Source: Macrostomum lignano (lineage: Eukaryota). Taken from it: 42,864 nucleotides of DNA. Positions 13,701-42,727 of the stretch are shown piece after piece. The first letter of the stretch is position 1; every line of letters starts with the position of its first letter. The DNA lies in assembly GCA_002269645.1 (NCBI GenBank), contig NIVC01004536.1:34579-77442 (forward strand), read 5' to 3'. The notes under the pieces were generated by a model that had not been told where the DNA came from, searched no databases, and saw nothing but the letters and a program-made list of their open reading frames with translations. Position numbers and translations under genes: made by a program.

Positions 13701-16700
13701 TAATATCAGATATATTGAATAAATGGCGAGATTTGGCTTTATATAAAGGACTGGGAGGCGTGGTTCGGTTCCTATCAAAAGGACTGGGAGGTGTGGTTCG
13801 GTTCCTATCAAAAGGACTGGGAGGTGTGGTTCGGTTCCTATCAAAAGGACTGGGAGGTGTGGTTCGGCTCCTATCGAAAGGACTGGGAGGTGTGGTTCGG
13901 CTCCTATCGAAAGGACTGGGAGGTGTTGTTCGGCTCTTATCGAAAGGACTGGGGGTGTGGTTCGGCTCCTATCGAAAGGACTGCATGGGAGGTGTGGTTC
14001 GACTCCTATCGAAAGGACTGCATGGGAGGTGTGGTTCGACTCCTATCGAAAGGACTGCATGGGAGGTGTGGTTCGACTCCTATCGAAAGGACTGGGAAGT
14101 GTGGTTCGGCTCCTATCGAAAGGACTGGGGGTGTGGTTTGGCTCCTATCGAAAGGACTGGGAGGTGTGGTTCGGCTCCTATCGAAAGGACTGGGAGGTGT
14201 GGTTCGGTTCCTATCAAAGGACTGGGAGGTGTTGGTTCGGCTCTTATCAAAAGGACTGGGAGGTGTGGTTCGGCTCCTATCGAAAGGACTGGGGGTGTGG
14301 TTCGGCTCCTATCGAAAGGACTGCATGGGAGGTGTGGTTCGACTCCTATCGAAAGGACTGCATGGGAGGTGTGGTTCGACTCCTATCGAAAGGACTGGGA
14401 AGTGTGGTTCGGCTCCTATCGAAAGGACTGGGGGTGTGGTTTGGCTCCTATCGAAAGGACTGGGGGTGTGGTTTGGCTCCTATCGAAAGGACTGGGAAGT
14501 GTGGTTTGGCTCCTATCGAAAGGACTGGGGGTGTGGTCCAGCTCCTATCGAAAGGACTGGGGGTGTGGTTTGGCTCCTATCGAAAGGACTGGGGGTGTGG
14601 TCCAGCTCCTATCGAAAGGACTGCATGGGGAGGTGTGGTTCGGCTCCTATCGAAAGGACTGGGAGGTGTGGTTCGGCTCCTATTAGCTAATTAGCTAACT
14701 GAAAGGTAAAGCATCACGAACACGTAAGCATTTGAGCCATTGTTGCCTGGCGCCAACTGATACAAGGTGTCCGCCATGGCGTGAACACCCCTGCAGTAAT
14801 TGGACTCATTGCTGAGTTCGTAGTCCGGAGTTTGCAGAATCAGTTGCACTATTGATTTGTCTGAAATTTTGCAAGTGAGCACGCAGAGTAGCTCGTACTC
14901 GAAATACATCCCACCGACGTTTGGCCGACGTATACCGTTAATGGAAATGTACTACAAATAAAAACCATCGTTTACCCGTGACATCGAGTGAATCTTTGTT
15001 TGCTGAAACAGAATTTTTGTTTGCTGATTCAACATCAGAAATTTTGACTTGAATAAACTTGAATTCACTGACTCAAAATTGTTTACACTGAACTTGAGGT
15101 TGCAGACCCAGTTAAATAATGCTTTGAAGTGGTACTTCTGCTATTTGTGAAGAAGAAATTAGCCTACTCCTCAAACGGATTCGATCGCTCCCAATGAACT
15201 TTCAAAGTAGGTTAAATTCATACAGGATGTTCCGCTTTACATTTTTAATTCTAAGAATCTTGAGAGCAGTCTTTGGGAGCTGCTGGAAGTAACTTTAGTG
15301 ACAAACATATCCCAAACCTTAATCAAAATTAGAAACGTAGTGTAACCTGAATTTTTGGCAGTCAAATTGTGGTAGCCAGAGTAATATTTCTATTTCTTGC
15401 ATTGCAATCCATATTTCGATTCTGAAAGGGAAATTGCAGATCAGAATGCAACCAACTGGAAAACATCGAGTCCCAGTCGTGGTGAATCTCCGGTAGTCGC
15501 ATCGAGCCGTTCTCCACCCGCCGTTTTGTATCCGCCCAGATCAGGCAGGCTCGACCGGAGGCCGTGACATTCAGGCAACCGCTGTAGCGGGCCGCTTCCA
15601 GAACCTCTGTGTCGTCGCTAGCGCCGCTCGCTGTACAGTCGTACTCTGGAGGCGCAGCTGGGAAATTTCACCGCCATAATTGGTATTAGTGACGTTTTTA
15701 ACCATAGAAAAATTATTGAATTCTAGAGTATCTATGGTCAATATTTATAAGGTTAAAAAACCTGAAGAGCACCAAAAAAACACCAAAAGAACAGACAAAG
15801 ATTGTACCTAATCTACAGATATCGGAACCCCCACATACATGTAAGCGGGGGTATGGGGGGGGCGCAGTCCCCCTATATTTACCATAGACAGTAAAATTTT
15901 GAGTAGAGACAGTGAGAAGTGACAGTGAGAAACAGACAGACAAACAAATAGAATCAGTGAGGGTTGCAACTTCAACTTAAACTTGGAGGAAGACTTGGCG
16001 TATGACCTGCGCACTGCACGCAGGAGGACCCGTGGCGTCCGTTGAGCCTACATTGAATCTCCTTTCTGAGAGGATCAGTGTTTCCGCAAAGAAGAGGATG
16101 CGCATGGCGGTCAACGGTGAGACTAACACTGTGAAAATCCCGTTTGAGGACCTTCGGGTTAACTTATGCGCTAATGGAGAGACTGTCATCATTACTTGGG
16201 AATGATTTTTTGCTGGCTTGTTGCTATGACCCAACTGCTATGACTATGACTATTCCGATTGTCTTTATTCCTATTCCTACTTACTCCCAGTTTTCATTCG
16301 AGATGTTAAACTATGTTTTACGACTTAAAATGCACGGTTTTTTGTTTGATTCAACGCTCCCAATTTGTTGCAATTTGTTGCAACCTGTTTGGTTCATACA
16401 GAGGGAATAGGGTTCATATAATTGGCCTCGTTTTCAGCTTTGATATATCATATAATTGGCTCCTTTTTGAGTCACGATATATGAGACCAGACCGTAGACA
16501 ATAAAAAATTGAATAATGTGTTTTTGGAGGTTAACTGTAGATTAATAGTCTATCGAGCGATTAGTAGTACAACGAACTAGCACTAGTGGACCTTGATATT
16601 GTACTTTCTGTTTAAATCGAGGCAAGACAAGGCTACTCACGACAGAACGGAATATTGCAAGGCGATACGGAGAGGCCACGTGCTGGGTCCTCATAGAAGC

Positions 16701-19700
16701 AGATCGGTCCCTCCAGGAAGCGAGTCATCTTGCTTCCGTACGGCACGAAGATTTTCGTGTCCTCCCAGGCTGGGTTCAAATTAGAATTACAAGTTAGTTT
16801 TAGAAAGGAATTTTATTAAGCCGTATGAAAAGTCTGATTTAAGTGCTTCAACTGATAATCAGAACAACGGAATCAGTTATTCAAAACAAGAATCACCTTA
16901 TCCTGTTTTTTGCTATAATGGAGCATTGCGGGGAATTCCCATGGTCGGGTATACTCACCAAAGATTGGCTACAAAGGTTACCCAACGCCTGTTAGTATTT
17001 GTCGGTAAAACGCAGGGACTAAGCTCTTAGAGACAAGGGGGTAAACAGTGCATAAAAACGCAAACAATCATAATTTGGCACGCAACGGGCCAGGGCAGAA
17101 GAAATGGGGAGATGGATGCAGCTGGTGAGGGTTGCGCAGACGGCTGGGGGGTTGGCGTAGATGGCTGGTGGGCAGACGGCTGAGGGGTTGGTGCAGACGG
17201 CTGGGGGGTTGGCGTAGATGGCTGGGGGGCAGACAGCTGAGGGGTTGGTGTAGACGGCTGGGGGTTGGCGTAGATGGCTGGGGGGCAGATGGTTGGGGGT
17301 TGGTGCAGACGGCTGGGGGGTTGGCGTAGATGGCTGGGGGGCAGACGGCTGAGGGGTTGGTGCAGACGGCTGGGGGGTTGGCGTAGATGGCTGGGGGGCA
17401 GACGGCTGAGGGGTTGGTGCAGACGGCTGGGGGTTGGCGTAGATGGCTGGGGGGCAGACAGCTGAGGGGTTGGTGCAGACGGCTGGGGGGTTGGCGTAGA
17501 TGGCTGGGGGGGCAGATGGTTGGGGGTTGGTGCAGACGGCTGGGGGGTTGGCGTAGATGGCTGGGGGGCAGACGGCTGAGGGGTTGGTGCAGACGGCTGG
17601 GGGTTGGCGTAGATGGCTGGGGGCAGACGGCTGAGGGGTTGGTGCAGACGGCTGGGGGTTGGCGTAGATGGCTGGGGGGCAGACAGCTGGGGGTTGGTGC
17701 AGACGGCTGGGGGTTGGCGTAGATGGCTGGGGGGCAGATGGTTGGGGTTGGTGCAGACGGCTGGGGGGTTGGCGTAGATGGCTGGGGGGCAGATGGTTGG
17801 GGTTGGTGCAGACGGCTGGGGCAGACGGCTGGGGGTAGGTGCAGACGGCTGGGGGGTTGGTGCAGACGGTTGGGGGGGCTGGGGGGTCGATGCAGACGGC
17901 TGGGGGTAGGTGCAGACGGCGGGGGGTTGGTGCAGATGACTGGAGGGTTGGTGCTGACGACTGGGAAGTTGGTGCGGACGACTGGAGGTGGGTCGATGCA
18001 GACGCATTGGCAGATAGGGGGTAAGAGTGTCACCTAATCGATAGTTAAAGATTCCTTGTTCATCGGTGCAGCTGAACCCAAGTAAAACAGTTGAAAATAC
18101 TCAAACTCTCAAAGCTGACTGAAGTGGCAAAAACTTACCAAAGGTTATTAGAGTCAAACTAAAATTGATCAAAATATCGATCGAGAATAAATACTTGAAA
18201 TAGATTTGTTCATACCAACGTTTCTAACTTTGTAGACGCTGACTGAGGCCTCTCCCCCGCACCATTGGTTGAAGTCTCCCGGACAGGGCGAATCGCAGAA
18301 GTCGTCATCGATTCCTTCAGACACGGGCTCGCTACCGCAATAGCAGGATGACCTTCTGAGTGCCATGTGGGTGAAGTTTCGGTTGTAACAGCACTCCAAG
18401 CACACGTCGACTGTCAGCAGCGTGATGGTCAGGGCGAAACAGCTGTAGGTGAAGTGCTTTCTACTCTCACTCTCTCTGAAGCAGCCGGACTCCAATTTCA
18501 GTGGCACTTAATGGGATCAAGTATGAAAATAATAAGCAAAAATCTGTATTTACAAATTTGTAAAAAAATTAAAACGCGGTCATCACGATACCCCTTAGAA
18601 TACAGCTTCGAAACTCTCCTATAGATTTTACAAAATTTGAGAGCGATCATAATAATTATTTATTACACCTGCTCCAATTGGGCCAGATGTGCAACCGACA
18701 GCTCAGCCGCAGCTATTGCGCGGCGCATCTGAAGGCTGCGTACGGCTGTTCAGTCCAAGGACTGGGTGGTCGCCACACACACCCTCAATTACCCCAGCTA
18801 ATGCTGGCACTCATTTTACAGCTGGGTGAACTGAAGCAATGCAGAGTTAAGTGTCTTGCTCAAGGACACAAATTGCTCCAGTGGGAGCAGGAATCGAACC
18901 CCCGACCGATCTTCAAGTCGTGAGTCCGACGCTCTAACCTCTAGGCTACAACCCCCCTAGTGAGAGCGAACTAGTCCTGTTCCATTGAGTGTACCTCGTC
19001 ACGTATAGATTCAGTGCAATTAGCATTGCTACACCATCTCATTTTGTACTATTTTACCCAATAATGGCTAGTCAAGAATGGACTCTAGCAAACTAAACTG
19101 TGAGTTTTTAATATCGTACCTGTGGCGTACGGATTGATATCTTTCATTGTCAGTCCTTTTGCTTGGCGACACCGCGCGTCGCCATCAGAGTAGTTTAGCG
19201 CCAGGATCCTATCAGCCAAGGAGTTCAAGCCCTTGGATTTTAGGCTGTTCGCAGCCTGGTTCCAGGCCAGACACGGGGTCTCGAACGCGTACGGCTGTGC
19301 GGGCGCACTGCTCGATTGCGGCCTCACTTGAACGCTGTCGGTGTACAGAGGCACCGCGCTTCTGTCTCCACTGTACTCGCCTCCGCCGATGGTGAAACGG
19401 CAAGTGGAAAACTGATCTGGAAATGGTATGAGCATCGATGCTAAAGGTTACCAAACCTTAGCACTCTAAAGTGTAGGGTTCTAGAGCCACTTTTCCGACT
19501 TCCGTTCCTCCCTGAGACTTTGACTCCCCCCGGTCTGTGCTACTCGTACAGAATATACTCATAAAGCTCCATTCGAAGCGAAATTCTTTCAATCATTTAA
19601 AATACTTTTCCGAGGATGGATGAACATAATTAAGGAATCTGAGTCGAATTCTCAAGGCTTAGATTTGCAATCCATAACATTTTTTAATCCATTAAAATGT

Positions 19701-20542
19701 TATTTCCGTTGTAAATTTATGACTTTCACAGGTTTGGACCAAAAATTTGTTCGCTCGAAGAGTTGTGCAAATCGATATTATAGTTGGCTTGGCCTAGAGT
19801 CAAAATACTTATTCAGTTATTGCACGATCAACGCATTTCACTCTACCGAAGGCTTTCCGCTGAAACCAGGCGATGATAGACTGTTCGGCAGTGTTGGCCG
19901 CATCGTCCAGGGCCAGAGTTGGCGAGCTCAGCGACACTTCGTCTTCTCCCCTGGTGATGTCGAATTTGCTCAAATGAATCTGGCAAGTCAGATTGCACTC
20001 TTTTTTTAGTCCACGCAGCCTCGGTCTGTCCCAAGTAGCGCTAAACCTGCTGCTGAGCTTGCTCATTGACAGGATGTTCGCCGGGCAAATGTACACGTCC
20101 GGGAACTGGTAGGGCAACGATGTGGTCAGACTCGTTAGCAGTGGCGTGCTCGAGTATCTGGGTGTAGATCGTTCGAGAGTAAGTATTTTGCGGTACGAAT
20201 GTAGTAAATAAATTTAAAATTAAGTCTAAATCCGCACCTATCAATCAGAGTGTAAAGGTGATAGCAGAAGCCGCCATATGCTCCCAGGAGGAAGACAATC
20301 CAGATAGTTCGACCAGCGGCTCTACTCTGAGACTCCAGCCTGCTTAAACCGTGGGCCGATGTGTAGCTGCAGAAATTCCAGAAGGAAGCCGACAGGCTGG
20401 CGGCGCCTCCCCTCGCAGCTGAACTCCCCTCAGCAGGAGTTTGGGCGGCATCATCTGTAGAAAATGATTGAACCTCGTCGACCGAAACCTGCCAAGTTGA
20501 ATCCCAACAGTTTGATTGGCAGTGCAATTGAAAGTTGAGCAT
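10719..20542 (-). CDS. DEG/ENaC (amiloride-sensitive Na+ channel family) subunit, paralog A, with kringle-WSC-kringle extracellular insert; 12 exons, ~1035 aa
   Basis: Exons 5' to 3': 20542-20238, 20157-19847, 19416-19120, 18506-18216, 16769-16641, 15657-15457, 14860-~14758 (donor uncertain), 13661-13564, 13436-13084, 12879-12677, 12337-11721, 10918-10719. Shows the pre-TM1 HG motif (TSAHGLSR), TM1 (TIWIVFLLGAYGGFCYHLYTLI), FPDVYIC, CEFNGQSC, a Cys-rich thumb (CFNEF...NCSCLP...CKLPC), WPN, and TM2 LLADMGGILGLWCGISLLTVCE with a G-I-S filter. The start ATG and the exon 7 donor are uncertain. Confidence 0.87.
11277..11634. mobile_element. hAT-type MITE in the last intron of paralog A
   Basis: 14-bp imperfect TIRs (CAGGGGCGTCGCCA / CAGGCGCGTCACCA, 12/14), a perfect 8-bp TSD CTTGTGCG at 11269-11276 and 11635-11642, and internal ~21-bp CATTTTGGCGCCGCAGGCAC repeats. 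Confidence 0.88.
13564..15657 (-). other. Paralog A exons 6-8: kringle-2
   Basis: YDC...RYSGCLNVTASGRACLIW (15657-15457), SNYCRG (from 14860) and EPGCFYLNEAENTILFEACTVKPC (13661-13564) supply all six kringle cysteines. Confidence 0.82.
13740..14683 (+). repeat. ~33-bp minisatellite (GAAAGGACTGGGAGGTGTGGTTCGGCTCCTATC) in paralog A intron 7
   Basis: About 28 units with 32- and 36-nt variants that recur as higher-order blocks; there are no unique spacers. Confidence 0.97.
16641..16769 (-). other. Paralog A exon 5: kringle-1 C-terminal half (Cys4-6)
   Basis: Hand translation WEDTKIFVPYGSKMTRFLEGPICFYEDPARGLSVSPCNIPFC matches kringle PWCY...C-x-IP-x-C. It has a ccag acceptor and gtgagt donor; 129 nt, phase 1-1. 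Confidence 0.8.
17125..17960 (+). repeat. G-rich composite minisatellite (~57-bp unit built from CAGACGGCTGGGG-type subunits) in paralog A intron 4
   Basis: GGTTGGCGTAGATGGCTGGGGGGCAGACGGCTGAGGGGTTGGTGCAGACGGCTGGGG repeated, decaying toward 17960. Confidence 0.95.
18216..18506 (-). other. Paralog A exon 4: WSC domain
   Basis: SGCF...LTVDVCLECC...MALRRSSCYCG...FCDSPCPGDFNQWCGGEASVSVY has canonical WSC cysteine spacing. The exon is 291 nt, phase 1-1. Confidence 0.9.
18690..18956 (-). mobile_element. tRNA-derived CORE-SINE (MIR-like core)
   Basis: The minus strand has an A-box-like TAGCCTAGAGG and B-box GGTTCGATTCC, then GTGTCCTTGAGCAAGACACTTAACTCTGCATTGCTTCAGTTCACCCAGCTGTAAAATGAG, which resembles the MIR/CORE domain. 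Confidence 0.75.
19120..19416 (-). other. Paralog A exon 3: kringle-1 N-terminal half (Cys1-3)
   Basis: CRFTIGGGEYSGDRS...PCLAWN...DARCR matches the kringle pattern C-x-G-x-Y-x-G...C-x-x-W...NYCR. The exon is 297 nt, phase 1-1. Confidence 0.7.
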
Positions 20543-20605
20543 TGCCTTTACTGAACTACGAGCGTATCTGTGTATTTTTATTCTATCAAAGGCAAGAGGC
20601 TGTGA

Positions 20606-21389: not shown

Positions 21390-21470
21390 TCCCAGGAGGA
21401 AGACAATCCAAATAGTTTGACCAGCTACTCTACTCTGGGAGTCCAGCCTGCCTAAACCGTGGGCCGATGT
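21390..21470 (-). pseudogene. Remnant copy of the DEG/ENaC first exon (HG motif plus start of TM1)
   Basis: Translates TSAHGLGRLDSQSRVAGQTIWIVFLLG. By manual alignment it has 7 mismatches in 81 nt versus paralog A exon 1 (20282-20362). It is truncated on both sides and has no downstream exons. Confidence 0.85.
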
Positions 21471-25325: not shown

Positions 25326-25969
25326 ATCCCTCCCTCTATGCCTACGCTTTAATTCGTTGACACATCGCAGGCCATATACGCTTAGATTAATTTACAGGCT
25401 ATCGACCCTCAATTTTTACCGGTGTTTCTGGTGGGAGCAATTAAGGGAGATCCGGTCTGACAGTTATATTTTTAATAGTTTTTTAAAATCGTCTGATATT
25501 ACAGTAGATTGAAAAATTCTAAAAAATGGGAATTAACTAAAACAGGGTATATAAATTCTGTGGAAGGAGTTCCTACATTGTTTAAATGATCAAAGTTTTT
25601 TTATACACTATCTTTAGCGAACTATAACGATATAGTTTATAGAACGATAAAAGACACTTTCAAACCGATTTTTAACAATAATTTAACAATTAACAATAAA
25701 TAGTTGAAAAATAGTAATCACAGCAAAAATATTGACAAACAAAGGCAATATCAATATCATTTAAATAAACAAAAGCTTTGAAAAGCTTATAAAAATGTTC
25801 GTGTGCATTAAAAATATTAGAGAACAAAATATCTGAGGTTGCAATAATTTGACTTCGTATACCTTTCGTAGTTTAGAATGATTCAATATTTTCTCAAGGC
25901 TGTCTGTTATTAAAAACACAACAACCATTTTTGTTATTCTCTATGTTTTAATATTTGTCTTACTACAAC

Positions 25970-28900
25970 TCAAAAGCGGCTGCTTTCAACTCCACCGTCT
26001 TCATCAGCAACTTCACCGCCATTGTTGGCATCGTCTTTCATCGATGGCGGCGCTGTTGGCAGCTCCGGTACGGCGTACGCAGCCCCGGGGCCGTCGTGTC
26101 CGCTGGCGCCCCTGTCAGAGCTGCCGCGCCGCTGTTTGTCCCCAGCGCAGAACTGCTTCAGCGTTAGAATTACGTAGACTGACAGCTCGATCAGCTCGCA
26201 CACGGTCAGAATGGAGACGCCGCACCAGAGGCCCAGGATGCCTGTGTTCGAGCCGTTGAATGCAGGTGCTAGGATATACTTTTATCGCTGTTTTCTCAGC
26301 TAATAATCTAATAATAATCTCAGGAGGGCTGTTAGCACCCATGGGCGAAAGCATAGCCTAGTGGTCTAGTGGTTTTGGCTGGATTCCAAGTGCAGTCAAA
26401 TTAATTTCTGCTCGTGCAATGAACGGCCTTGATGGCCAACCCCCCAAGGCGCAGTGAAGTGTAGGTGCCTAAAGATATGAATAACGTTAGCGCCGCTGTA
26501 CACTCCTGTGTGAGTGTGTGCCTGTGCGTATGACTGCGTACGTATCCGCGCGCTTGTGTGCCTGCTCGGGGGAGTCGGCGGAATGGGCAGCAATGCCTCT
26601 CACCAGGGTTGTGACAATGTCGCTTAAGTGCTCCAGGGTGCACACAGGCCCTGTCTCTAACCAAGATTGGCACCCAGGGGCACCGCCTTTGGTGACACCG
26701 TCCCATGACCAGGGGTGAGGTAAGGTACAATAATTCTGCCCATCCCGCTGACGCCGACAGGCACTTGCCCTGACTTTCACATCATCAGGCATGTACTCTC
26801 TTTGTGCCCTTGGGGGTTGGCCACGATCGGTGTGAATCGCACAACGACCTCTCCGGCCAATTTTTTTTTGTACTTCCTTTAGGCGAATTGATCAGATTTA
26901 TGAAACTACGTAATTAGAAACATATATACAGAAGAGTTACTGAAACTCTTGTATCCAGGCAATATCTGCGAAATTACGTACTATAACTGTGTTGCGAAAC
27001 TGTGGAAAGTAAATTTAAGCGCTCACCGCCCATGTCCGCCAGCAAGTTCTTAATTGGATAGGCCTCTTCCTCCAGGATGTCTTCGCCAAACATTTGAGCC
27101 GACGAGACCGACACCATGGCCAGCTGGTCCTGCAGCGTGAGCAGCTGGTAGTCGAAGTTCATGAGTTCAGTTATGTTTTCGCTCAAACTCCGGTACCGAA
27201 GATAGGTCGAATAGATGACACCCGGACCTCTTAGAGACTTTACTCGATTCGGATAGCCGTAGGTTTTGGCCAGATTTCTTAAGAAACCCTCCGACACCTG
27301 CCTCCGAACGTTCGGCCAGGGAAAAGAGTTCTGGCTGACCGTGTACTTTCTTGTCTCGCAAGGCGGCATGCAATGGTCCCGAGCTTCAACTCGGTAAGTC
27401 TTCACCCTCTTCTTCTGTTGGATGAAGCATTGGTCAGTTTTGTACAAATTTTCTATGTCTGTTGAGTTGAAGCAGATGGGATATTTGGCAAATAGCTGCT
27501 CAGGAATGGGTAGGAAAGTCGGCAGACAGCGGCAGTTTTCGGCGAATCTGCGCAGCACGTACTCATTGAGGCAGTCCTCCTGGGTGCTTGTCTGGAACGT
27601 CACTTTCTGCTTTGTTGAGCTCCTAAAAATAATATTGTTGCCAAGTTGCTCCATGCGAGTTTACACTGTTGGGGTGATACAGCAGAAGTACACGCAGACA
27701 ACGACACTTACTTCATGCCGTTATAGCTAATAACCAGTTGCTTCATCAAGTCAATCTTAGCAGTCCAATTTTCTGCATTTTCAACAGCCCAAAAGGTGGT
27801 TTCCATCAAGGCCCTAAAAAGTTTTGCTACAAGTTAAAAAATTACATCGGAATCAATCTCTTGAAACAGCTCGAAATGCTTACGTCACATTTGATGGCAG
27901 GCCAGCAGGCTTCCAATAGTCTAGAACGTACGTGACAGGCGGTGCGGCCTTGCTGCACTCCAGCGATGGCTTTGATAGTCGGGTTGTCCTGTCGAGACGC
28001 ACCTTGAATTCCGACTTTTGAGACTTGACAACTCCAAAGGCTTGCGATATCCATGGAAACGTGCCGTTTGGTACGATGACCACCTGCATTTATTGCGTTT
28101 GTTCTCGGCTTAGTTTGGCTAACAATAATATTCGCTTAATTTGATATTATAACTGTGATTAGGTCATTACGTCAAAAGCACGGTTGCCTGCTCTGCTTGA
28201 ATCGCCCAGCTCGTTCAAGATCGCCTTCGACGCGTCTTGCGCCTGCTCTGGACCGATGCCGTCGGAATCGGTGGCGTCGGTGAACAGCTGAACAGCCAGG
28301 CTGGCTTCTTTCAGTTCTGGCAGGCTCAAACCTGTAATAAATGGCTCTTTCATGAACTTATAACAGACACCGCTCTCTGGGTGTAAGACCTCCTGAAAAT
28401 GGTTGGCTGTGCACTGCCAGCCGTAGAAGTCGCAGTCAATCAAGCTGACGTCGAGGCTGGGACCAAACTGGCGAGCCAGTTCGGCTGTTCCAATGTTGTT
28501 TCTGACGATGCCAGGGACGCTGGGACTGGTCTCCACTGAAGTGAGTGAGTAGAAATTAATGTCTCGGTGCATTCTCCGGCCCGCGGGTGACATGCAACCC
28601 CGCAGAGCCTCTCTATCCGGCCCTCGGGTCCTTTGAAACTTCAAAATAGCAATCCGGCCCGCTCAAGGTTGATGTCTCTTCTCTTCTCTCCCTCTCTCTC
28701 TTTTCCCTCCTCTCTCACCTTCTCTCCCCCTCTCCTCTCTCCTCTCTCCTCTCTCCTCTCTCTACTCTCTTCTCTCTAACCTCTCCCCTCCCTCCCCTCC
28801 CCTCTCTCCACTCTCATGTCTCTACCCTCTCCTCTCTCCACTCTCCTCTTCTATTATCTTCTATCCTTTCTCTAATCTCTCTTCTCTCTTCTCTCATCTC

Positions 28901-31900
28901 TCATCTTCCATCCCATCTTCTTTCCACTCTCATTGAGGCAAAACAGTTTGCTGACCCCTGGTGTAGTATTTCCAAATTTTGACTGAATTTACCTTTTGAA
29001 CTAAAGTTGAACAAACATATTTGTTAGTGCAGATGTAATCAAAGTAAGGTTTTTAGACACAGTTGGCGACCTCACCGCAGGATTCGATAGCGCAAGTCTC
29101 AAAGTGAATTTCACTGTCTTCCTCGTTAACATAGAAACATCCGGGAACCAACGACGAGATTAGTGTGCTTCGGCTGGGTTGATGGGGAGTTTTTGAATTT
29201 GTAGCTCGTACAGGAATCCAAGCTGGATAATAATTATCACAGGTATTTCATTGAAAAAAATTAGCTGGGGAGCTTACCTGGAGCCAACCCGGTTCGTGCC
29301 AGTCTCATCGTAGTAAGTGGCATCGTACAGGACGTGGGCCGCTCTGCAGTAGTTCGTGCGATTGCTTATCGCGTAGTCAGTCGTCAAGATGATCATCTGA
29401 TCGATTGAGTAGTCTGGGCAAAATATGACAATTTTAGTTGTATTGATGATTGATAAATTTTTATATTGGTTTTTTGACAACGGCACTGAAAAACTCACAT
29501 CGGAATGGAAAATTCCAAGAAATCAAATCTGAGTTTGCCAGGCTAAGCGTCCGCTTGGCTATGGCAGTCTTCACGTCGTCCCACACCATGCACTCCCGAC
29601 CGGAGTTGGTATAATTCAGGTTGCCTGTGTACTTTGCTGACTGCTTCTCCGCGACGTCGCCGGAGCTGCGCACCACGCAGTCGTAGGTTCCCGAGGCGGC
29701 TGCGGATGAAGCAATGAGAAAGTTAAATTTGCAGATAGGCGAAAGCATATGAGCGAAACTTGTTTTTAGTCTGAAGGACCTTAGCAACTGGGATGATTTT
29801 TTTTATTAGAGGCCGGGGGGTTGTGTGCACCCTGGCGCACTTTAAGCGACATCAACACACAACCGGCGAGAGGCATTACTGCCCATTCCGCCGACTCCCC
29901 TGAGCAGGCACACAAGCGCGCGGATACGTACGCAGGCCCACACTCACACAGGAGTGTACAGCGGCCCTAACTTTATTTATCGTTAGGCATGTACACTTCA
30001 CTGTGCCTTGGGGGGTTGGCCCTCGAGGCCGTTAATTGCACGAGCAGAGCCAAGCTGAGATTCCAATTTAGTCCCAGATTATTGTGACTGCACTTGGAAT
30101 CGAGCCTGGGCCGCTGGCACACGAGAGCAGCTGCGCCAGACCACTGGACTACGGCCCCTCATTAGAGCAAGCTCAGATAACGCAATGCCGCATACAGCAG
30201 AACGGGATGTTGCAGTAGGACAGCGCCAGTCCATTGTGCGTATCATTGTAGAAACAGTACGGCCCAATCAGATAGTCGGCCAGGAAGCCTCCGTAGGACG
30301 CGAATACAGGCAAGTCGGCTGAAAAAAGAAAGTCAATTATGATTAAAGTAGAGGGCCAGGGAAACTTTGTTTCTTAGATAATATAAGCAAAAATTATACG
30401 ACAGTAGTAGATACGTAATACAGCTTCATTGATTTGGGAACTTTATTTATGGAATAGAATTTAGGAAGAATGGAATTAGCAGGCACTGTAGAGTTGGTAG
30501 AGGTCCCTCCTGTGCCTTCCTTCCTGTGCCTTCCCTCCTGTGCCTTCCCTCCTGTGCCTTCCCTCCTGTGCCTTCCCTCCTGTGCCTTCCCTCCTGTGCC
30601 TTCCCTCCTGTGCCTGTGCCTTCCCTCCTGTGCCTTCCCTCCTGTGCCTTCCCTCCTGTGCCTTCTCTCATGTGCCTTACCTCCTGTGCATGTGCCTTCT
30701 CTCAGTGCCTTACCTCCTGTGCCTTCCCTCCTGTGCCTTCCGTTCTTGCCCTTAACTTAGGCACCGTGCCGAAATGAAGGGCTCGAGAAAGAGTCTACAG
30801 AGGCGAGAGATTATGCAACCGCGCCGCTTTTAATATGCAAGACAAGGCTCCCTCACCCGTGGGCCGGATCTGCTTCACGCTCATGTACAAGCCGTCTCCT
30901 CCGCAGGTTTCATCCGCATCCGCGGCCTGTCCGGGACACGAGTACTTGCAGTTACTCGAGTCTGCCGTGTTACCAGGCACAATTCTGTTACTGCAGAAGC
31001 AATCATAGTACTGCAACCCGTAGTACTTGAAGTTGTTTTTGAAGCAGCATTCGGTGCACTTTTCGACGTTCATAGTGGGAATCTGGCCGCCGAAGCAGCT
31101 CACAAAAAGTCTGTCCGATGCGCTGTCCTGATAGCAGATTGGATCCTTGTCTAGGTTGATCAGGTAGGCTGAAATTCATTCGATCAGATATAAGCGTGTT
31201 ATAGCAGTGAATAGAAGTAACCAACTCCAGTAAGAAACGCTATTATGATACGAAACAAGCGCATTTCATTTTTGCGCTGGTCTTCAACAGTGTACGAAAC
31301 ACCGGATGGCCAAGAGTTCACAACAACTGCATTGAAATGTAAACCTACGCCTTCGGCGACATCATCCCACAACCAGCACTTTGGCAGTCTCTCATACGAG
31401 CTACACACGCTCACACAGGGTGTACAGCGGGCTTCTGACTTTTCAACCGTCAGGCAGGTACGCTCTCTGTGCCTTGGGGGTTGGCCCTGACGGCTGTGAA
31501 TCGCATGAAAACCCGCCGGCCAATTTTCGTGCACAAGTACCAAATAAATTTGTTTGCGCACGGGAATCGAACCAGGGGTCGTGGCGCGAGAGTTAGACAC
31601 AATTTTCGCTGAGTAACTCCGCTCTATTGCGCTGCTTTTAATAGCATATTTTACCAATTCTGGCTCTGGTTAGTACAAGAAAATAACATTTCATAACCTG
31701 AAACTTTCGTATCTGGGAAATGAATTTCATAAAGAAAAAACCGTCAATACTTTGAGTGAGCGAGCGTTCCTGGCATGAGCAGACAGCCCCAGAAACTCAC
31801 TGGTGAAATTGTCGAATTCCTCCAGCGGCAGGCCAGGTGGAGTCCGGCACCTGGCGTCATTATTTGAGAAATTATAGGACAGAATCTTGTCCGACATGTT

Positions 31901-34214
31901 CTTGAGGCCGGCCTCTGCAAGCAGACGGGCGGCCTCGTTCCATGGCATGCAGGGCAGCTCCGTGACGTAGTTCGGCTGCGTCAGATTGCTTGGTGGCAGT
32001 GTCAGCCTCAGGCTGTTGCCGAACACGGGCACCGAGCTCTTGTCTCCGGTGTATTCGGTTCCGTCCAGGGTAAAGCGACACTCGCTGGTGTTTCCCGCTG
32101 AAAGACAAAACGTGGGAAATTATGGTGTAGTAGCTTTTCTCCTGCACTTCTTTCCTTCTTTGTAGTGTACCGGCATTCTTGCATTGTAATGAATAGAATG
32201 AAGTGCATGGGATGATTCCTGAATTAATTAGGAGAAAGCACTTTTAAAATTCGAAGCATTCTAATTGCTTCAAATGAATGCACCGTCATGCATCTAGCTT
32301 AAATATTGATTTTACAGCAACAGCAACAAGAGACGCAACCCAGAGAAGCAAAGTCAAGCGGCCAGGGTGCGTCAGACGGCGTCGCAAAGCAGGCAGTCTC
32401 CGCGTATCGACGGGTTCGGGCCTGGCCCCGCCTAAATGGGCCCTGGAAGGGGAGCAATAGAATGTAGAGGCTGGGGGCAGCAGCAGGATCACGTGACCCG
32501 CCAGTCATCGCCCGCGCAGGATGTTGGGACGGGCGTCGAGAAATACCTTGAGTTACGGCACTTACAGACCCATCCGCACCCTCTGCAAACTAAAGAACTC
32601 GTTTTCACTATCAAGATTCAACTAGTGCCTTGTTAGTTGGCTACGTATTTTGCTAGGAGGGCTTTGAACACTGCCTCCCATTCCACTGACCTAGAGCATG
32701 CCCACGCACACGGATACGTAAACGATTTTCACATCACCAGGCAATGAACAAAAAGTCGCAGGTCAAGACTCAATTTCTGTGCATTTTGTGTCTCAAATAA
32801 TTGCGAACCCTTACTGAGTGTGCTACTGGTCTTAAACAATGCATCTTATTAACACTTTAGTCTTAACCAGGGGATTCGTTACCGGGGGGGGGGACATTAC
32901 AATATCTTGTCCCCCCGTCCCACCTTGTGAACCGTTATCTGAAATCAGTAAGTTTGCGTTCAAAGCGCCAAAATTAGTGCTAAAAACGCCATGTAATTCC
33001 CCCCACCTGTGCCTCGAGTATTTATAACTCAAACATTAACTTGTCCCTCAGAATGAGTTTCCTCACCGATGCCTTTGTTGTTGAGCTTGGGCATCAGAGC
33101 AGCTTCCACAGAATACACCATTCTAGCGAATGCGTACATTGGCGTGCTCAGGTAGACGTCGGATTCCTTGAAGTAGCTCAGCCTGGCCTGGCAGGTGGTG
33201 TTGCAGTCTTTCTTCAGTCCGCGCAACTTCGGCATGTCATCCTTGAGCTTGAATGGTTCGTAGGCCTTACTCATCGCGATCGGATTCTTCGGGCAGATGT
33301 ACACATCCGGGAACTCGTACGGCAGCGAGGTGGCCAGGCTTGTGAGCAACGGCGTGCTGGTGAATCTGTGAGTAGATTGGAATTCAGCCGAATGAAATCG
33401 GACGCACGGGCTACTTGATATTTGTTTAACTGAACAAACGGTTAAAGCAATCTTGATATTATCTACATCGTCAACGGATTTGTTTAACTGATCAAACGGA
33501 TAAGTGGATGACTCATCGTCAATGCTTCTTAGTTGATATTTGTTTAATGAAGTTGTTTATGTTGAATAATGTACTAATGACGTTTGTATATCGTATAAAT
33601 TTCTTTCAATCCAAAGCTAAAACTGAGGGCTATGGGCACCCTGACGCATCGCTCTCAGCGAAATTGTCCCACAGCCAGCGGCAATTCTGCCTTTTCTGCT
33701 GACTCCTGAGCACATGCAAGCCCGCCAATACTGTACGTAGGAATGAACTCATACACGATCTCTTCAGGGTGTACAGCAGCCTTAATCTTCTAATCGTCAG
33801 GCATTAGAAGATTATCTGTACACTCTCTGTGCCTTGGGGGAATTGCACGACAACCCGCTCGCCTCCCCGCTGAGTCTTCAGACCGCCCTGCAGCTATATA
33901 AGTCAGGTAAGACAAGTCAACTCTGGGCTGGCCCTCAAGGCTGTGAACCCTTCGGCCAATTTTCATTGCCCCAAATGAATTCACCTGTCAATCAAGGTGA
34001 ACAGGTGGTAAGCGAAGCCGCCATAAGTGCCGAGCAGAAAGGCGATCCAGATTGTGCGGCCAAAGGCCGTCGACTGGGCGGCGAAGCGTCCCAGGCCGTG
34101 GGCGGTGGTGTACTGGGCGAATTCGCGGAACGAATTGGCGATGCCGAAGCCGCCAGCCTCTGCTTCTGCTGTACCGCTTGCGTCTGCGGCGCTCTGCTTC
34201 TCAGTGTCTGCCAT
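25970..34214 (-). CDS. DEG/ENaC channel subunit, paralog B, with kringle-WSC-kringle extracellular insert; 12 exons, 1042 aa
   Basis: Exons 5' to 3': 34214-33985, 33365-33067, 32097-31801, 31168-30857, 30318-30196, 29699-29499, 29413-29278, 29173-29076, 28535-28171, 28083-27884, 27622-27027, 26241-25970. All junctions are GT-AG and phase-compatible, giving 3129 nt. Shows TTAHGLGR, TM1, FPDVYICPKN, CDFYGWQC, thumb cysteines, WPN, and LLADMGGILGLWCGVSILTVCE with a G-V-S filter. Confidence 0.92.
26352..26646 (+). mobile_element. tRNA-headed SINE, family 2, copy 2
   Basis: TAGCCTAGTGGTCTAGTGG (A-box-like) followed by GATTCCAAGTGCAGTCA. The body is the reverse complement of copies 1 and 3. Confidence 0.7.
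28565..28960 (+). mobile_element. hAT/Charlie (MER58-like) non-autonomous element with an internal CT-rich tract
   Basis: Right TIR GTTTGCTGACCCCTG (28946-28960) and CCGGCCC subterminal motifs. It is homologous to the copy at 22840-23080, which starts with CAGAGGTCGGCAAAC. Confidence 0.6.
29076..29699 (-). other. Paralog B exons 6-8: kringle-2
   Basis: YDC...KYTGNLNYTNSGRECMVW, TNYCRA and VPGCFYVNEEDSEIHFETCAIESC supply six cysteines in kringle order. Confidence 0.85.
29826..30158 (-). mobile_element. tRNA-headed SINE, family 2, copy 3
   Basis: Colinear with 20606-20944 over ~330 nt; head GGGGCCGTAGTCCAGTGGTCTGG...GGCTCGATTCC. Confidence 0.78.
30196..30318 (-). other. Paralog B exon 5: kringle-1 C-terminal half
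   Basis: Hand translation DLPVFASYGGFLADYLIGPYCFYNDTHNGLALSYCNIPFC, with a strong (t)7cag acceptor and gtatgc donor; 123 nt, phase 1-1. Confidence 0.82.
30505..30740 (+). repeat. 14-bp minisatellite (CTCCTGTGCCTTCC) in paralog B intron 4
   Basis: About 16 units. Confidence 0.95.
30857..31168 (-). other. Paralog B exon 4: WSC domain
   Basis: PICYQDSASDRLF...MNVEKCTECCFKNNFKYYGLQYYDCFCSN...NCKYSCPG...TCGGDG. The exon is 312 nt, phase 1-1. Confidence 0.9.
31395..31620 (-). mobile_element. Related SINE copy (partial)
   Basis: B-box GGTTCGATTCCC on the minus strand and the shared body motif GGTGTACAGCGG...CTGTGCCTTGGGGGTTGGCCCT. Shorter relics of this body also occur at ~1065-1105, ~26760-26860 and ~33740-33965. 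Confidence 0.6.
31801..32097 (-). other. Paralog B exon 3: kringle-1 N-terminal half
   Basis: ECRFTLDGTEYTGDKS...PCMPWN...DARCR. The exon is 297 nt, phase 1-1, the same length as in paralog A. Confidence 0.72.
32362..32460 (-). mobile_element. Short 3' fragment of the same RTE family (intron of paralog B)
   Basis: The reverse strand encodes LLPFQGPFRRGQARTRRY and is near-identical to ~21790-21860. Confidence 0.7.
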
Positions 34215-34246
34215 GCCTGCTGATTGAGGGGAAATGCCTGTCTTAG

Positions 34247-35294
<1,048 letters not shown>

Positions 35295-36293
35295 CATTTG
35301 TGATTCTAATTAGTGCTCGAGAGCACACTATACTGTTTATTTGAGCAGAATGGATCAAATTCATTAGGTATTGACAGGTGTGTCACTTCTGTTACCTCTG
35401 ATGTGTCTGTTGGGTTTCAGTTTGATGAATGACAGCTGAAAATGATTCCCCAGCTATGCAACTCGTTAGAAACTGTGAGTCGCAATTAAAACTTTTCAGC
35501 AATTAATATCCACTTATTCCGAAAAAATGGAAAACCTCGTGGTTGAATTTTTGGATGAGGCCAGAATAGGATGAGGGCACCTGTTATGCTGTTTGTAGGG
35601 GTTTAGTATTCTTACAAATTTATGAAGACATTGTAAGGTTCATAAAGGAGCACCAGTACAGTGGTGCTTAGAGAGACGATGCCAGATGAGAAGTTCTAAA
35701 GTGCCTAGAGAATGGGCCTAAAGTACACAGAAGATGTGTCGTGAGGTGTGCAGAAGATTTGAGGTGTCGTGACATAAGTATGTAGGAAGGAATGAAGTTA
35801 GCAAAGGTATTCTAGCAAGTGTTGAAACAAGCTCACCTATTGCAGCAGGGGAGCCACTTTGCCAAAAATTCCGGTGGGCAAAAGATCCATCATCTCTTCC
35901 TCGCAGCTTCCTTTTATCAACGTGTGGGACAGCGAGTGCTTGGATAGGGCGATTCAATTAACAATTGCAGCTGGAATAATCCGCTTGGCTCCACCCCAGA
36001 GACTGGAACTCTGTTTAGGCAGTGGGGGGAGGGCATACCTGCAGCAGGTTGTTTTGACAATTGATGAGCTCCAGTCTAAACCCCGCTCAGGGAACACAGG
36101 AGATATGGAAGTGACAACTCAACCCACCCCCCACAAAATGGGACCCAGTCGAACCAACCCGGGACAATTTGTTTAAAAGATTACTTGGCTTGCTTAATTT
36201 CCAAAAACTGCAGTACCGATAAATAGTCTCGTTTTGAAGCTGAAGAAATTCTTCATTGGAATATGAGCAGAAGTTCAGTGTGTATGTGCTAGA

Positions 36294-40484: not shown

Positions 40485-40766
<282 letters not shown>

Positions 40767-42725: not shown

Positions 42726-42727
42726 CC

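What the first reader, a model, noticed from the sequence alone, without database searches (positions are those of the whole stretch)
30196..32097. WSC domain nested inside a split kringle (domain-in-domain insertion)
Seen in both paralogs (A 19416-16641): exon 3 has only kringle Cys1-3 (C..G.EY.G..S / C..W / ARCR). The missing Cys4-6 (GPYCFY...YCNIPFC in B, GPICFY...PCNIPFC in A) appear only in exon 5, after the WSC exon. The WSC therefore sits in the NYCR-to-PWCY loop. Without the WSC exon that loop in B is ~33 aa, close to the ~31 aa of the same loop in the intact kringle-2. Inference: the kringle was duplicated first and a WSC exon then inserted into copy 1. Kremen has the two domains in series, not nested. 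Automated annotation would probably miss this split kringle, and exon 5 is absent from the ORF track.
Basis: partly seen in the sequence, partly recalled or inferred. Interest (0 to 1): 0.85.

Follow-up and report, generated by a model that had tools for sequence, protein, structure and literature searches.

The report
WSC domain nested in divergent kringle
In a family of flatworm (Macrostomum lignano) sodium-channel genes, a WSC domain encoded by one exon sits in the middle of a very divergent kringle-like domain, a rare domain-within-a-domain layout that standard annotation does not see and whose fold is not yet confirmed.

Summary
On the minus strand, exon 3 (32097-31801) carries Cys1-3. 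Exon 4 (31168-30857) is a genuine WSC domain (Pfam 48 bits). Exon 5 (30318-30196) carries Cys4-6. All junctions are GT-AG, phase 1. Paralog A (19416-16641) and two unlinked paralogs have the same layout. RNA-seq-derived GenBank proteins (PAA47210.1, PAA85180.1) contain exons 3-4-5 in that order.

The split-kringle reading is supported only at remote-homology level. Profile-profile comparison of ex3+5 against canonical kringles gives Prob 95%, P=3e-8, with 0 of 300 shuffles reaching the score. The N-half maps to kringle columns 17-56 and the C-half to 57-78. All six Cys are invariant in six paralogs.

The Pfam kringle HMM gives 0-15 bits against a cutoff of 34.3. AlphaFold2 was low-confidence and Foldseek recovered only the WSC. 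The supposedly intact kringle-2 is also below the Pfam cutoff.

The host is a DEG/ENaC channel, and the family was found only in M. lignano. This is a new variant of known kinds, of moderate interest. The order of evolutionary events is unresolved.

The parts
31801..32097 (-). Gene B exon 3 (297 nt, phase 1-1): N-half of kringle-like domain K1, with Cys1, G-x-EY-x-G, Cys2 (PCMPW) and Cys3 (ARCRTP), plus a 15-aa linker
   Evidence: Translation and splice sites. Present verbatim in P0031/P0002. hhalign places it on kringle columns 17-56.
30857..31168 (-). Gene B exon 4 (312 nt, phase 1-1): complete WSC domain with 10 Cys, which is the canonical 8 plus 2 family-invariant extras
   Evidence: Pfam WSC 48.1 bits, E=1.4e-12. 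Foldseek hits Kremen1 and yeast Wsc1, TMt 0.70. No kringle similarity, P=0.35.
30196..30318 (-). Gene B exon 5 (123 nt, phase 1-1): a 20-aa linker plus the C-half of K1, with Cys4 (GPYCFY), Cys5 and Cys6 (YCNIPFC)
   Evidence: hhalign places it on kringle columns 57-78, P=3.4e-6. Weak Pfam Kringle hit on HMM positions 59-79. Spliced to exon 6 in P0001, P0002 and P0031.
29499..29699 (-). Gene B exon 6 (phase 1-1): kringle-2 N part, with Cys1, KYTG and NSGRECMVW
   Evidence: Pfam Kringle 22.1 bits on HMM positions 4-32. Weak PDB hits to HGF, prothrombin and angiostatin kringles.
29278..29413 (-). Gene B exon 7 (phase 1-2): kringle-2 middle part, with NYCR (Cys3)
   Evidence: Present in P0031.
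29076..29173 (-). Gene B exon 8 (phase 2-1): kringle-2 C part, with PGCFY...CAIESC (Cys4-6)
   Evidence: P0032, which is exactly exons 6-8, is named 'Kringle domain-containing protein' by UniProt.
19120..19416 (-). Paralog A exon 3 (297 nt, phase 1-1): K1 N-half
   Evidence: tblastn 40% identity to B. Splice sites.
18216..18506 (-). Paralog A exon 4 (291 nt, phase 1-1): WSC, 10 Cys
16641..16769 (-). Paralog A exon 5 (129 nt, phase 1-1): K1 C-half (GPICFY...PCNIPFC)
25973..34214 (-). Host gene B: a DEG/ENaC channel subunit (product is PAA47210.1 / P0031, 1091 aa). The K1[WSC]-K2 module lies after TM1 and strand beta1 (FPDVYICP) and before the rest of the ASC extracellular domain and TM2.
   Evidence: Pfam ASC 175 bits. 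PDB hits to FaNaC1, ASIC and ENaC. Exon map of P0031 on the window.
10722..20458 (-). Host gene A: a tandem DEG/ENaC paralog with the same module. Its kringle-2 splice junctions are unresolved and no annotated protein was found for it.

Best explanation
Exons 3 and 5 encode the two halves of one highly divergent kringle-like domain (K1). Exon 4 encodes a complete WSC domain inserted into the Cys3-Cys4 surface loop of K1, the loop between CRNP and PWC in canonical kringles.

Shown:
- The exon order, the phase-1 symmetric exons and their presence in mRNA-derived protein models.
- A bona fide WSC domain.
- Six invariant Cys, three in each half.
- Invariant 15-aa and 20-aa linkers on either side of the insert.
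- Complementary mapping of the two halves onto a kringle profile.
- The same architecture in at least six paralogs, four of them checked at genomic level.

Inferred:
- The WSC folds as an autonomous unit whose first and last strands are neighbours.
- The chain then returns so that Cys4-6 pair with Cys1-3 (C1-C6, C2-C4, C3-C5). This would close the kringle around the base of the WSC and fix the two domains rigidly against each other, as in the tightly packed KR-WSC pair of Kremen1.
- The arrangement most likely arose by shuffling a symmetric 1-1 WSC exon into an intron of one copy of a duplicated kringle.
- K1[WSC] and kringle-2 sit in the variable finger region of a DEG/ENaC channel ectodomain. 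They probably form a ligand-, glycan- or matrix-binding regulatory head for the channel.
For: - Exon and phase structure. The same three-exon phase-1 layout occurs in unlinked paralogs P0008 (L001) and C (L002).
- mRNA-level support: P0002 and P0031 contain exons 3-4-5-6 with the predicted junction residues. These GenBank models derive from StringTie/TACO RNA-seq assembly (PMC5730564).
- WSC: Pfam 48 bits. Foldseek hits Kremen1 and Wsc1 with prob 1.0 and TMt 0.70.
- Kringle similarity: hhalign of ex3+5 against 17 canonical kringles gives Prob 93.5-95.1 and P=2e-7 to 3e-8. The global alignment covers columns 1-78 with P=1.6e-8. In the shuffle null, 0 of 300 reach the real score, z about 13.
- Halves: they align separately to columns 17-56 and 57-78, while the Cys-rich WSC insert does not align.
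- K1 resembles kringle-2 from Cys2 to Cys6 (Prob 88; tblastn). Kringle-2 is labelled Kringle by UniProt and weakly hits kringles in Pfam and the PDB.
- Six Cys and the linker lengths are invariant in six paralogs.
- Kremen1 paper: the disulfide pattern and the WSC beta1-beta5 adjacency.
- Inserted domains are typically 50-200 aa with close termini (PMC13114784). This insert is 94-118 aa.
Against: - The Pfam kringle HMM does not recognise ex3+5. Scores are 12.4 bits for B and 0-14.8 bits for the other paralogs, against a cutoff of 34.3, and only the C-terminal tail aligns.
- phmmer and hmmsearch against PDB sequences are not significant. Plasminogen appears at E=0.44, tied with a spurious hit.
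- An exhaustive HMMER search with the exon-3 profile found no kringle proteins, only family members and FG-GAP false positives.
- The AF2 models are low-confidence (pLDDT 39.4 and 56.5). They predict two helices in the Cys2-Cys3 segment, which canonical kringles lack. Foldseek returns no kringle structure.
- Every loop is expanded relative to canonical kringles. The domain is about 139 aa without the insert, against about 80.
- The cysteine parity argument is not decisive. The insert has two extra invariant Cys that could in principle pair with the halves instead of with each other.
One member was validated at 104.6 bits.
Confidence: 0.7

Rival explanations
1. The two flanks are kringle-derived remnants that no longer form one domain. 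Exon 3 folds on its own, partly helical, and exon 5 is a short hairpin. Their odd cysteines are satisfied by the two extra cysteines of the WSC exon, or stay free or form intermolecular bonds. On this reading the architecture is three decayed pieces in series rather than a functional nested kringle.
For: - AF2 places fairly confident helices (pLDDT 73-80) at residues 52-73 of the N-half, and Foldseek finds no kringle.
- Pfam and HMMER fail to recognise the concatenate.
- The insert has 10 Cys rather than the canonical 8.
Against: - All six flank cysteines, the GP-x-CF and CN[IV]P-x-C motifs and both linker lengths are invariant in six paralogs at 29-42% identity. That level of conservation is hard to explain for decayed remnants.
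- The halves map to exactly complementary parts of the kringle profile.
- The two extra WSC cysteines are close to each other in sequence (SC-x12-13-C-x2-CC) and are most simply a fifth internal disulfide.
- Kringle-2 has the same helix-prone Cys2-Cys3 segment and is still flagged as a kringle.
Confidence: 0.15
2. The present-day topology is the same but the history differs. Either the WSC was already inside the kringle before the tandem duplication and kringle-2 later lost it, leaving a 29-34-aa scar loop with an intron. Or the ancestor was KR-WSC-KR, and reciprocal partial deletions left the N-half of one kringle and the C-half of another.
For: - The kringle-2 Cys3-Cys4 loop is also abnormally long, 29-34 aa against about 11 in canonical kringles, and contains an intron.
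- The kringle-2 loop intron is phase 2 and offset by 7-9 residues from the K1 junctions. So 'insertion into a shared pre-existing intron' is not directly supported.
Against: - Simple loss of a 1-1 exon would leave a phase-1 intron, not a phase-2 one.
- A single insertion of a symmetric 1-1 exon is the more parsimonious route.
- Both K1 halves resemble the matching halves of kringle-2, as expected if a whole kringle was duplicated.
Confidence: 0.3
3. The WSC exon, or exon 5, is a cassette exon. All three exons are symmetric 1-1, so skipping exon 4 would produce an uninterrupted kringle-like domain. The nested form would then be one of several isoforms.
For: - All three exons are multiples of 3 and phase 1-1.
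- One database model (P0013) lacks the C-half altogether.
Against: - Every RNA-seq-derived model recovered (P0002, P0031, P0004, P0008) includes the WSC and the C-half.
- P0013 comes from the older, error-prone assembly and also lacks the Cys1 region.
- No skipped isoform was seen.
Confidence: 0.1
4. The kringle resemblance of exons 3 and 5 is a chance or convergent cysteine-motif similarity. The flanks would then belong to a novel lineage-specific cysteine-rich domain that happens to host a WSC.
For: - No sequence-to-profile method reaches significance.
- There is no fold confirmation.
- The family is restricted to one species in the databases searched.
Against: - The profile-profile score is about 13 SD above composition-matched shuffles.
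- Five collinear kringle motifs appear in the right order: Y-x-G, C-x2-W, CR-x-P, P-x-CF and C-x-[IV]P-x-C.
- The adjacent paralogous kringle-2 independently hits kringles in Pfam, the PDB and UniProt.
- The WSC insert from the same proteins acts as a negative control and gives no hit.
Confidence: 0.12

Closest known systems
Kremen1/2 ectodomain (Kringle-WSC-CUB; PDB 5FWS-5FWV)
   Same: - Kremen has the same two domain types, kringle and WSC, side by side in an extracellular region.
- In Kremen1 they pack tightly and jointly form a ligand (Dkk) binding surface.
- Kremen1 is the top Foldseek hit for the module.
   Different: - Kremen has the domains in series (KR, then WSC, then CUB) on a type-I receptor.
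- Here the WSC interrupts the kringle (A1-B-A2 topology), there is no CUB, a second kringle-like domain follows, and the host is a DEG/ENaC ion channel.
- Sequence identity is low, about 19-27% over the WSC.
Laminin L4 domain inserted into an LE (laminin EGF-like) module
   Same: A globular domain is inserted between two cysteines (Cys3 and Cys4) of a small, disulfide-held extracellular module, and the host module still closes around it (PMC5338690). This is the best precedent for a domain nested in a cystine-knotted module.
   Different: - The host (LE, 8 Cys) and the insert (CBM35-like beta-sandwich) are different.
- Laminin is ancient and pan-metazoan, whereas this arrangement was found only in M. 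lignano.
Canonical kringles (plasminogen, HGF, prothrombin, tPA; Pfam PF00051)
   Same: - Six cysteines in the same order.
- Collinear motifs: Y-x-G, C-x2-W, CR-x-P, P-x-C[FY] and C-x-[IV]P-x-C.
- Profile-profile Prob 95%.
   Different: - The domain is not contiguous.
- It is about 139 aa without the insert, against about 80. All loops are expanded, and the Cys3-Cys4 loop is 35 aa against about 11.
- NYCRNPD is degenerate (ARCRTP), so the lysine-binding acidic loop is not conserved (from my own knowledge of kringle lysine-binding sites).
- It scores below Pfam's threshold.
WSC domains (yeast Wsc1 sensor, Kremen, polycystin-1; Pfam PF01822)
   Same: Exon 4 scores above the Pfam threshold and has the canonical 8 Cys. 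The predicted fold matches Wsc1 (TMt 0.70) and the Kremen1 WSC.
   Different: - It has two additional family-invariant cysteines.
- It is used as an inserted domain rather than a terminal or serial module.
- In paralog C it has decayed below Pfam detection.
DEG/ENaC channels with elaborated finger regions (for example the ENaC GRIP domain and the nematode degenerin extracellular regulatory domain; comparison from my own knowledge)
   Same: The host is a genuine ASC-family subunit. The extra module lies after beta1 in the variable finger region, where other family members also carry lineage-specific regulatory insertions.
   Different: The insertion here is built from mobile extracellular modules (kringle-like, WSC, kringle-like), about 390 aa in total. 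I found no description of this for any DEG/ENaC channel in the literature searched.

Membership tests
Kringle (Pfam PF00051) | Scores above the Pfam gathering threshold (34.3 bits) | tested here: not met
   ex3+5 of B scores 12.4 bits (E=0.2) and P0007 scores 14.8 bits. The four other paralogs give no hit. Only HMM positions 58-79 align. The whole protein scores 17.7 bits, from kringle-2 only.
Kringle (Pfam PF00051) | Six conserved cysteines in kringle order, with the flanking signature residues (Y-x-G, C-x2-W, C-R-x-P, P-x-C-[FY], C-x-[IV]-P-x-C) | tested here: met
   C6, Y15, G17, C49, W52, C83, R84, G/P before C4, F after C4, C5, P and C6 are invariant in six paralogs. They align onto the kringle consensus in local and global hhalign.
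Kringle (Pfam PF00051) | Profile-level homology to canonical kringles | tested here: met
   hhalign gives Prob 93.5-95.1% and P=2e-7 to 3e-8. In the shuffle null, 0 of 300 reach the real score. HMMER profile-versus-sequence against the PDB is not significant.
Kringle (Pfam PF00051) | Disulfide connectivity C1-C6, C2-C4, C3-C5 | not testable with these tools
   No model coordinates are exposed. Testing this needs mass-spectrometric disulfide mapping or a structure. The pattern is taken from Kremen1.
Kringle (Pfam PF00051) | Kringle three-dimensional fold | tested here: inconclusive
   AF2 gave pLDDT 39.4 and then 56.5, with the N-terminal 45 residues below 40. Foldseek against the PDB returns no kringle structure.
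Kringle (Pfam PF00051) | Contiguous domain of about 80 residues | tested here: not met
   The domain is split by a 94-118-aa insert. It is about 139 aa even without the insert, because every loop is expanded.
WSC (Pfam PF01822) | Scores above the Pfam gathering threshold (27.8 bits) over the full-length model | tested here: met
   48.1 bits, E=1.4e-12, HMM positions 4-82 of 82.
WSC (Pfam PF01822) | PAN-like WSC fold | tested here: met
   Foldseek hits Kremen1 5FWV (101 columns, rmsd 3.0) and yeast Wsc1 7PZ2 (TMt 0.70, prob 1.0). The model confidence in this region is only moderate, pLDDT 54-77.
Kremen family | Serial Kringle-WSC-CUB ectodomain on a single-pass receptor | tested here: not met
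   The order is nested, there is no CUB hit, and the host is a two-TM DEG/ENaC subunit.
DEG/ENaC (Pfam ASC, PF00858), host protein | ASC domain with TM1, a cysteine-rich ectodomain and the TM2 G-x-S motif region | tested here: met
   ASC scores 175 bits. PDB hits to FaNaC1, ASIC5, ASIC1 and ENaC cover TM1/beta1 and palm/TM2.
Nested (A1-B-A2) domain insertion | The host halves flank the insert and map to consecutive parts of a single host-domain profile | tested here: met
   The N-half maps to kringle columns 17-56, the C-half to columns 57-78, and the insert to nothing.
Nested (A1-B-A2) domain insertion | The insert is compact (50-200 aa) with N and C termini close in space | tested here: inconclusive
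   The size criterion is met at 94-118 aa (criteria from PMC13114784). Termini proximity is only inferred, from the beta1-beta5 neighbouring strands of the Kremen1 WSC. It was not measured.

The most novel reading that the evidence does not exclude
The K1[WSC]-K2 module is a functional sensor head built into the finger of a DEG/ENaC channel. The doubly tethered, rigid kringle-WSC unit would bind an extracellular glycan, matrix or protein ligand, as the KR-WSC surface of Kremen binds Dkk and as yeast Wsc1 senses the cell wall. It would transmit that binding, or mechanical pull, directly to the gate. That would make this a self-contained tethered or ligand-gated sodium channel class created by exon shuffling in macrostomid flatworms.
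Probability: 0.15. Interest if true: 0.75.

Novelty: new variant of a known kind. Interest (0 to 1): 0.5.

Why it matters
- Domain-in-domain insertions are common among enzymes but rare for small cystine-held extracellular modules. Laminin LE/L4 is the textbook case. A kringle acting as host for a WSC would be a second clean example.
- Here the genomic mechanism is still visible. The insert is a single symmetric phase 1-1 exon, conserved in at least four paralogous loci.
- The case shows a blind spot in domain annotation. A split and divergent host domain is invisible to Pfam and InterPro, so these proteins are filed simply as 'WSC domain-containing'.
- It reveals a lineage-specific DEG/ENaC subfamily of at least 7 members whose ectodomain carries adhesion- or ligand-binding modules. 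This gives a testable handle on how new gating inputs are grafted onto this channel family.

Tried and rejected
1. Pfam kringle HMM on ex3+5 for six paralogs gave at most 14.8 bits. It is not usable as positive evidence and is reported as a failed membership criterion.
2. phmmer of ex3+5 and hmmsearch of the six-paralog profile against all PDB sequences were not significant.
3. An exhaustive HMMER search of 1.84 billion representatives with the exon-3 profile gave 17 multi-stretch 'hits'. They looked like multi-kringle proteins but are bacterial FG-GAP repeat proteins whose scores are inflated by repeats. I rejected them as false positives. Only M. lignano family members are real hits.
4. AF2 on the nested module with 6 rows, partly fragments, gave pLDDT 39 and was unusable. 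With 6 full paralog rows it gave pLDDT 56.5, which is enough to confirm the WSC only.
6. A direct disulfide-distance check was not possible because no coordinates are available.
7. A loose regex 'kringle signature' test was badly designed. It demands the long loop, so 0 of 17 canonical kringles match it. I discarded it.
8. The cysteine-parity argument (3 + 3 odd cysteines must pair across the insert) is weakened, because the insert carries two extra invariant Cys.
9. Equating the K1 insertion point with the kringle-2 loop intron is not supported. The phases differ (2 against 1) and the positions are offset by 7-9 residues.
10. Word-indexed homolog searches returned only M. lignano proteins, so there is no outgroup to polarise the history.
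11. ARAGORN found no tRNA-like genes for the SINE-like intron repeats.
Full report
**What is there**

The window is eukaryotic, repeat-rich DNA. Protein hits of 98-100% identity place it in the flatworm Macrostomum lignano.

The finding lies on the minus strand in a gene I call B. Three open segments have canonical AG acceptors and GT donors, and every junction is phase 1:
- Exon 3 is 32097-31801 (297 nt).
- Exon 4 is 31168-30857 (312 nt).
- Exon 5 is 30318-30196 (123 nt).

Exon 3 encodes ...ECRFTLDGTEYTG...PCMPW...ARCRTP..., which holds three Cys. Exon 4 encodes a WSC domain (Pfam PF01822, 48.1 bits, E=1.4e-12, full-length match). Exon 5 encodes ...GPYCFY...YCNIPFC, which also holds three Cys.

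Paralog A, 12 kb away on the same strand, has the same three exons at 19416-19120, 18506-18216 and 16769-16641. Its phases are identical and its protein identity to B is 32-49%.

**Are the exons really spliced in this order?**

GenBank protein PAA47210.1 (P0031, 1091 aa) is identical to my hand-built model of gene B. PAA85180.1 (P0002) is 98% identical. Both contain exons 3, 4, 5 and 6 joined with exactly the junction residues I predicted...DNFT-T-YLINL......QIRPT-A-DLPVF... and ...NIPFC-S-ASGTYDC....

The BOX15 GenBank annotation of this genome derives from a genome-guided RNA-seq transcriptome assembly made with StringTie/TACO plus de novo transcripts (PMC5730564). This is therefore transcript-level evidence, although I did not see reads myself.

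The precomputed Pfam annotation of these proteins lists only WSC and ASC. UniProt names family members 'WSC domain-containing protein'. So automated annotation does miss any kringle in exons 3 and 5.

**Conservation**

An exhaustive HMMER search with an exon-3 profile, together with the word-indexed searches, recovered more family members, all from M. lignano: P0004 (paralog C), P0005, P0006, P0007, P0008, P0009 and P0013.

In six full modules that are 29-42% identical, several features are constant:
- The N-half has exactly 3 Cys, the C-half has exactly 3 Cys, and the insert has 10-11.
- The six flank Cys are invariant, as are R after C1, G-x-EY-x-G, W after C2, R after C3, GP-x-CF, and P-x-C at the end.
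- The linker from Cys3 to the insert is always 15 aa, and the linker from the insert to Cys4 is always 20 aa.

The genomic loci of two unlinked paralogs (L001 for P0008, L002 for C) show the same three exons, with phase-1 introns at the same two positions. The arrangement is therefore ancestral to the family. It is under selection and is not an assembly or annotation artefact.

**Is it a kringle?**

The evidence divides by the sensitivity of the method.

Sequence-to-profile methods fail:
- The Pfam kringle HMM gives 12.4 bits (E=0.2) for B's ex3+5. It gives 14.8 bits for one other paralog and nothing for four. Only the last 20 HMM positions align, and the cutoff is 34.3.
- phmmer and a six-paralog HMM against all PDB sequences are not significant. 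Plasminogen kringle 2 appears at E=0.44.
- The exon-3 profile pulled no kringle protein out of 1.84 billion representatives. The apparent multi-stretch hits are bacterial FG-GAP repeat proteins.

Profile-profile comparison succeeds:
Plasminogen K1 from that set scores 104.6 bits in Pfam.
- The ex3+5 profile gives Prob 93.5% with 3 paralogs and 95.1% with 6, with P=2.3e-7 to 3.1e-8.
- 300 column shuffles give a mean of 11.4 +/- 2.4 and a maximum of 18.6, against the real score of 42.4.
- The N-half alone aligns to kringle columns 17-56 (P=3.6e-5). The C-half alone aligns to columns 57-78 (P=3.4e-6).
- The cysteine-rich WSC insert from the same proteins gives nothing (P=0.35).
- A global alignment covers columns 1-78 (P=1.6e-8), and G-x-EY-x-G falls on the kringle's G-x-x-YRG.
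- The single large gap lies exactly between CR-x-P and GP-x-C, which is the Cys3-Cys4 loop.

K1 also resembles the downstream kringle-2 (exons 6-8) from Cys2 to Cys6 (Prob 88%; tblastn). Kringle-2 is independently recognised in three ways:
- UniProt names the exact 144-aa kringle-2 fragment 'Kringle domain-containing protein'.
- Pfam gives it 22.1 bits (E=1.9e-4).
- Its weak PDB hits are nearly all HGF, prothrombin and angiostatin kringles.

Kringle-2 is not 'intact' in the canonical sense, however. It is below the Pfam cutoff in every paralog, and its Cys3-Cys4 loop is 29-34 aa.

**Structure**

The predictor accepts only verbatim database or window sequences. The WSC-deleted construct could therefore not be folded.

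The nested module gave pLDDT 39.4 with a fragmentary alignment. With six full paralog rows it gave pLDDT 56.5 and pTM 0.47.

Foldseek against the PDB found Kremen1 (5FWT, 5FWV, 5FWU, 5FWS) and yeast Wsc1 (7PZ2, TMt 0.70), both through the WSC. It found no stand-alone kringle.

The model does predict a beta-hairpin over GPYCFY...LSYC, as in the kringle C-terminus. It also places two moderately confident helices between Cys2 and Cys3, which canonical kringles lack. No coordinates are exposed, so disulfide geometry is untested.

The fold test is therefore positive for the WSC and inconclusive for the kringle.

**Best explanation**

With confidence of about 0.7, exons 3 and 5 are the two halves of one divergent kringle-like domain, and the WSC is inserted in its Cys3-Cys4 loop.

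The mechanism is inferred rather than shown:
- In the Kremen1 structure the WSC sheet order is beta1-beta5-beta3-beta4-beta2, so its first and last strands are neighbours. That suits an inserted domain.
- Inserted domains are typically 50-200 aa with close termini (PMC13114784), and this insert is 94-118 aa.
- The fixed 15-aa and 20-aa linkers would lead out of and back into the kringle core. There, C1-C6, C2-C4 and C3-C5 would close the domain.

A caveat applies to the cysteine-parity argument. The insert has two extra invariant cysteines beyond the canonical eight. They are most simply a fifth internal disulfide, but alternative pairings with the flanks are not excluded.

**History**

The WSC exon is a symmetric 1-1 exon, the classic signature of exon shuffling, and both K1 halves resemble the corresponding halves of kringle-2. 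'Duplicate the kringle, then insert a WSC exon into one copy' is therefore the most parsimonious history.

It is not demonstrated, for three reasons:
- Kringle-2 is split differently, into exons with phases 1-1, 1-2 and 2-1.
- Its loop intron is phase 2. It lies 22 aa after Cys3 and 11 aa before Cys4, whereas the K1 junctions are phase 1 and lie 15 aa after Cys3 and 20 aa before Cys4.
- No outgroup sequence was found to polarise the events.

**Context**

Genes A and B are tandem DEG/ENaC (amiloride-sensitive channel) genes. Pfam ASC scores 175 bits, and TM1/beta1 and palm/TM2 align to FaNaC1, ASIC and ENaC structures.

The K1[WSC]-K2 block is about 390 aa. It lies after the first post-TM1 strand (FPDVYICP) and before the conserved ...C-x-F-x-G-x-x-C... 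region. That places it in the variable finger part of the ectodomain, an assignment I made from my own knowledge of ASIC topology. This is a three-level nesting: a WSC in a kringle in a channel ectodomain.

In the literature I searched, kringle and WSC are described together only for Kremen. I found no mention of a kringle hosting an insertion, or of DEG/ENaC channels carrying kringle or WSC modules.

The closest structural precedent is the laminin L4 domain, which is inserted between Cys3 and Cys4 of an LE module (PMC5338690).

**Verdict**

The topology is well supported at the level of remote homology and conservation, but fold and disulfides are untested and the order of events is open.
- Novelty: a new variant of known kinds. 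It is a new nested architecture of two known modules, in a lineage-specific channel family.
- Interest is moderate at 0.5. It is a neat case for researchers in domain evolution and annotation, and a possible entry point to a new type of DEG/ENaC regulation. It does not resolve a long-standing question.

Noticed in passing
window 10722-20458 (-) and 25973-34214 (-): Two tandem DEG/ENaC (ASC-family) channel genes carry a roughly 390-aa kringle-like/WSC/kringle-like block in the ectodomain finger region. At least 7 members below 50% identity exist, all from M. lignano. I found no description of such a channel architecture in the literature searched.
   Followed up: partly
window 15365-15470 (paralog A, end of exon 6): Paralog A has no in-frame GT donor at the position B uses, and a stop follows. 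Its exon 7 donor is also unclear. No annotated protein for A was found in any database searched. A may be decaying in its kringle-2 region or may be spliced differently.
   Followed up: partly
window 21351-21476 (-): There is an extra partial copy of the channel's first coding exon (TM1 region, 52% identical to B exon 1), about 1 kb upstream of paralog A's exon 1. It could be a duplicated pseudo-exon or an alternative first exon.
   Followed up: no
window 17118-17947 (intron 4 of paralog A): A G-rich 57/169-bp tandem array (GC 66%, GC skew 0.58) is open in all three minus-strand frames for about 1 kb and gives proline-rich pseudo-ORFs. It is probably an intronic minisatellite, but a mucin-like exon is not excluded.
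   Followed up: partly
window 30504-30741 (intron 4 of gene B); 24767-25326; 34224-35340; 40500-40800; 42620-42864: Several arrays are present: a 14-bp minisatellite (TCCCTCCTGTGCCT x16) between the WSC exon and exon 5, a (GAATA)112 array between the two genes, and long CTGT-type microsatellites that give spurious Cys-rich or TDRQ ORFs.
   Followed up: partly
window ~29800-30160 and ~31300-31600 (introns 5 and 3 of gene B); also ~20580-20850 and ~26400-26780: A shared dispersed repeat with a tRNA-like look occurs in several introns, containing '...CACACAGGAGTGTACAGCGG...GCCTTGGGGGGTTGGCCCT...'. ARAGORN calls no tRNA in it. It is probably a SINE-like element.
   Followed up: partly
P0013 (UniProt A0A1I8HMR1): This family member's model lacks the Cys1 region and the whole K1 C-half, so the WSC runs straight into kringle-2. 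It is either a mis-built model from the older assembly or a real variant that skips the exon-5 equivalent.
   Followed up: no
L002 ~5230-5310 (paralog C locus): In paralog C the intron between the WSC exon and the K1 C-half exon is only about 80 nt. The WSC itself has decayed below Pfam detection (11 Cys, no CGG motif), while the kringle-like flanks stay fully conserved.
   Followed up: partly
window 2098-3834 (+) and 5687-7258 (+): Two GC-rich (60-70%) long plus-strand ORFs lie upstream. The first is a DUF4550 protein (Pfam 90.8 bits). The second has no Pfam hit and contains poly-T/poly-threonine-coding repeats.
   Followed up: partly
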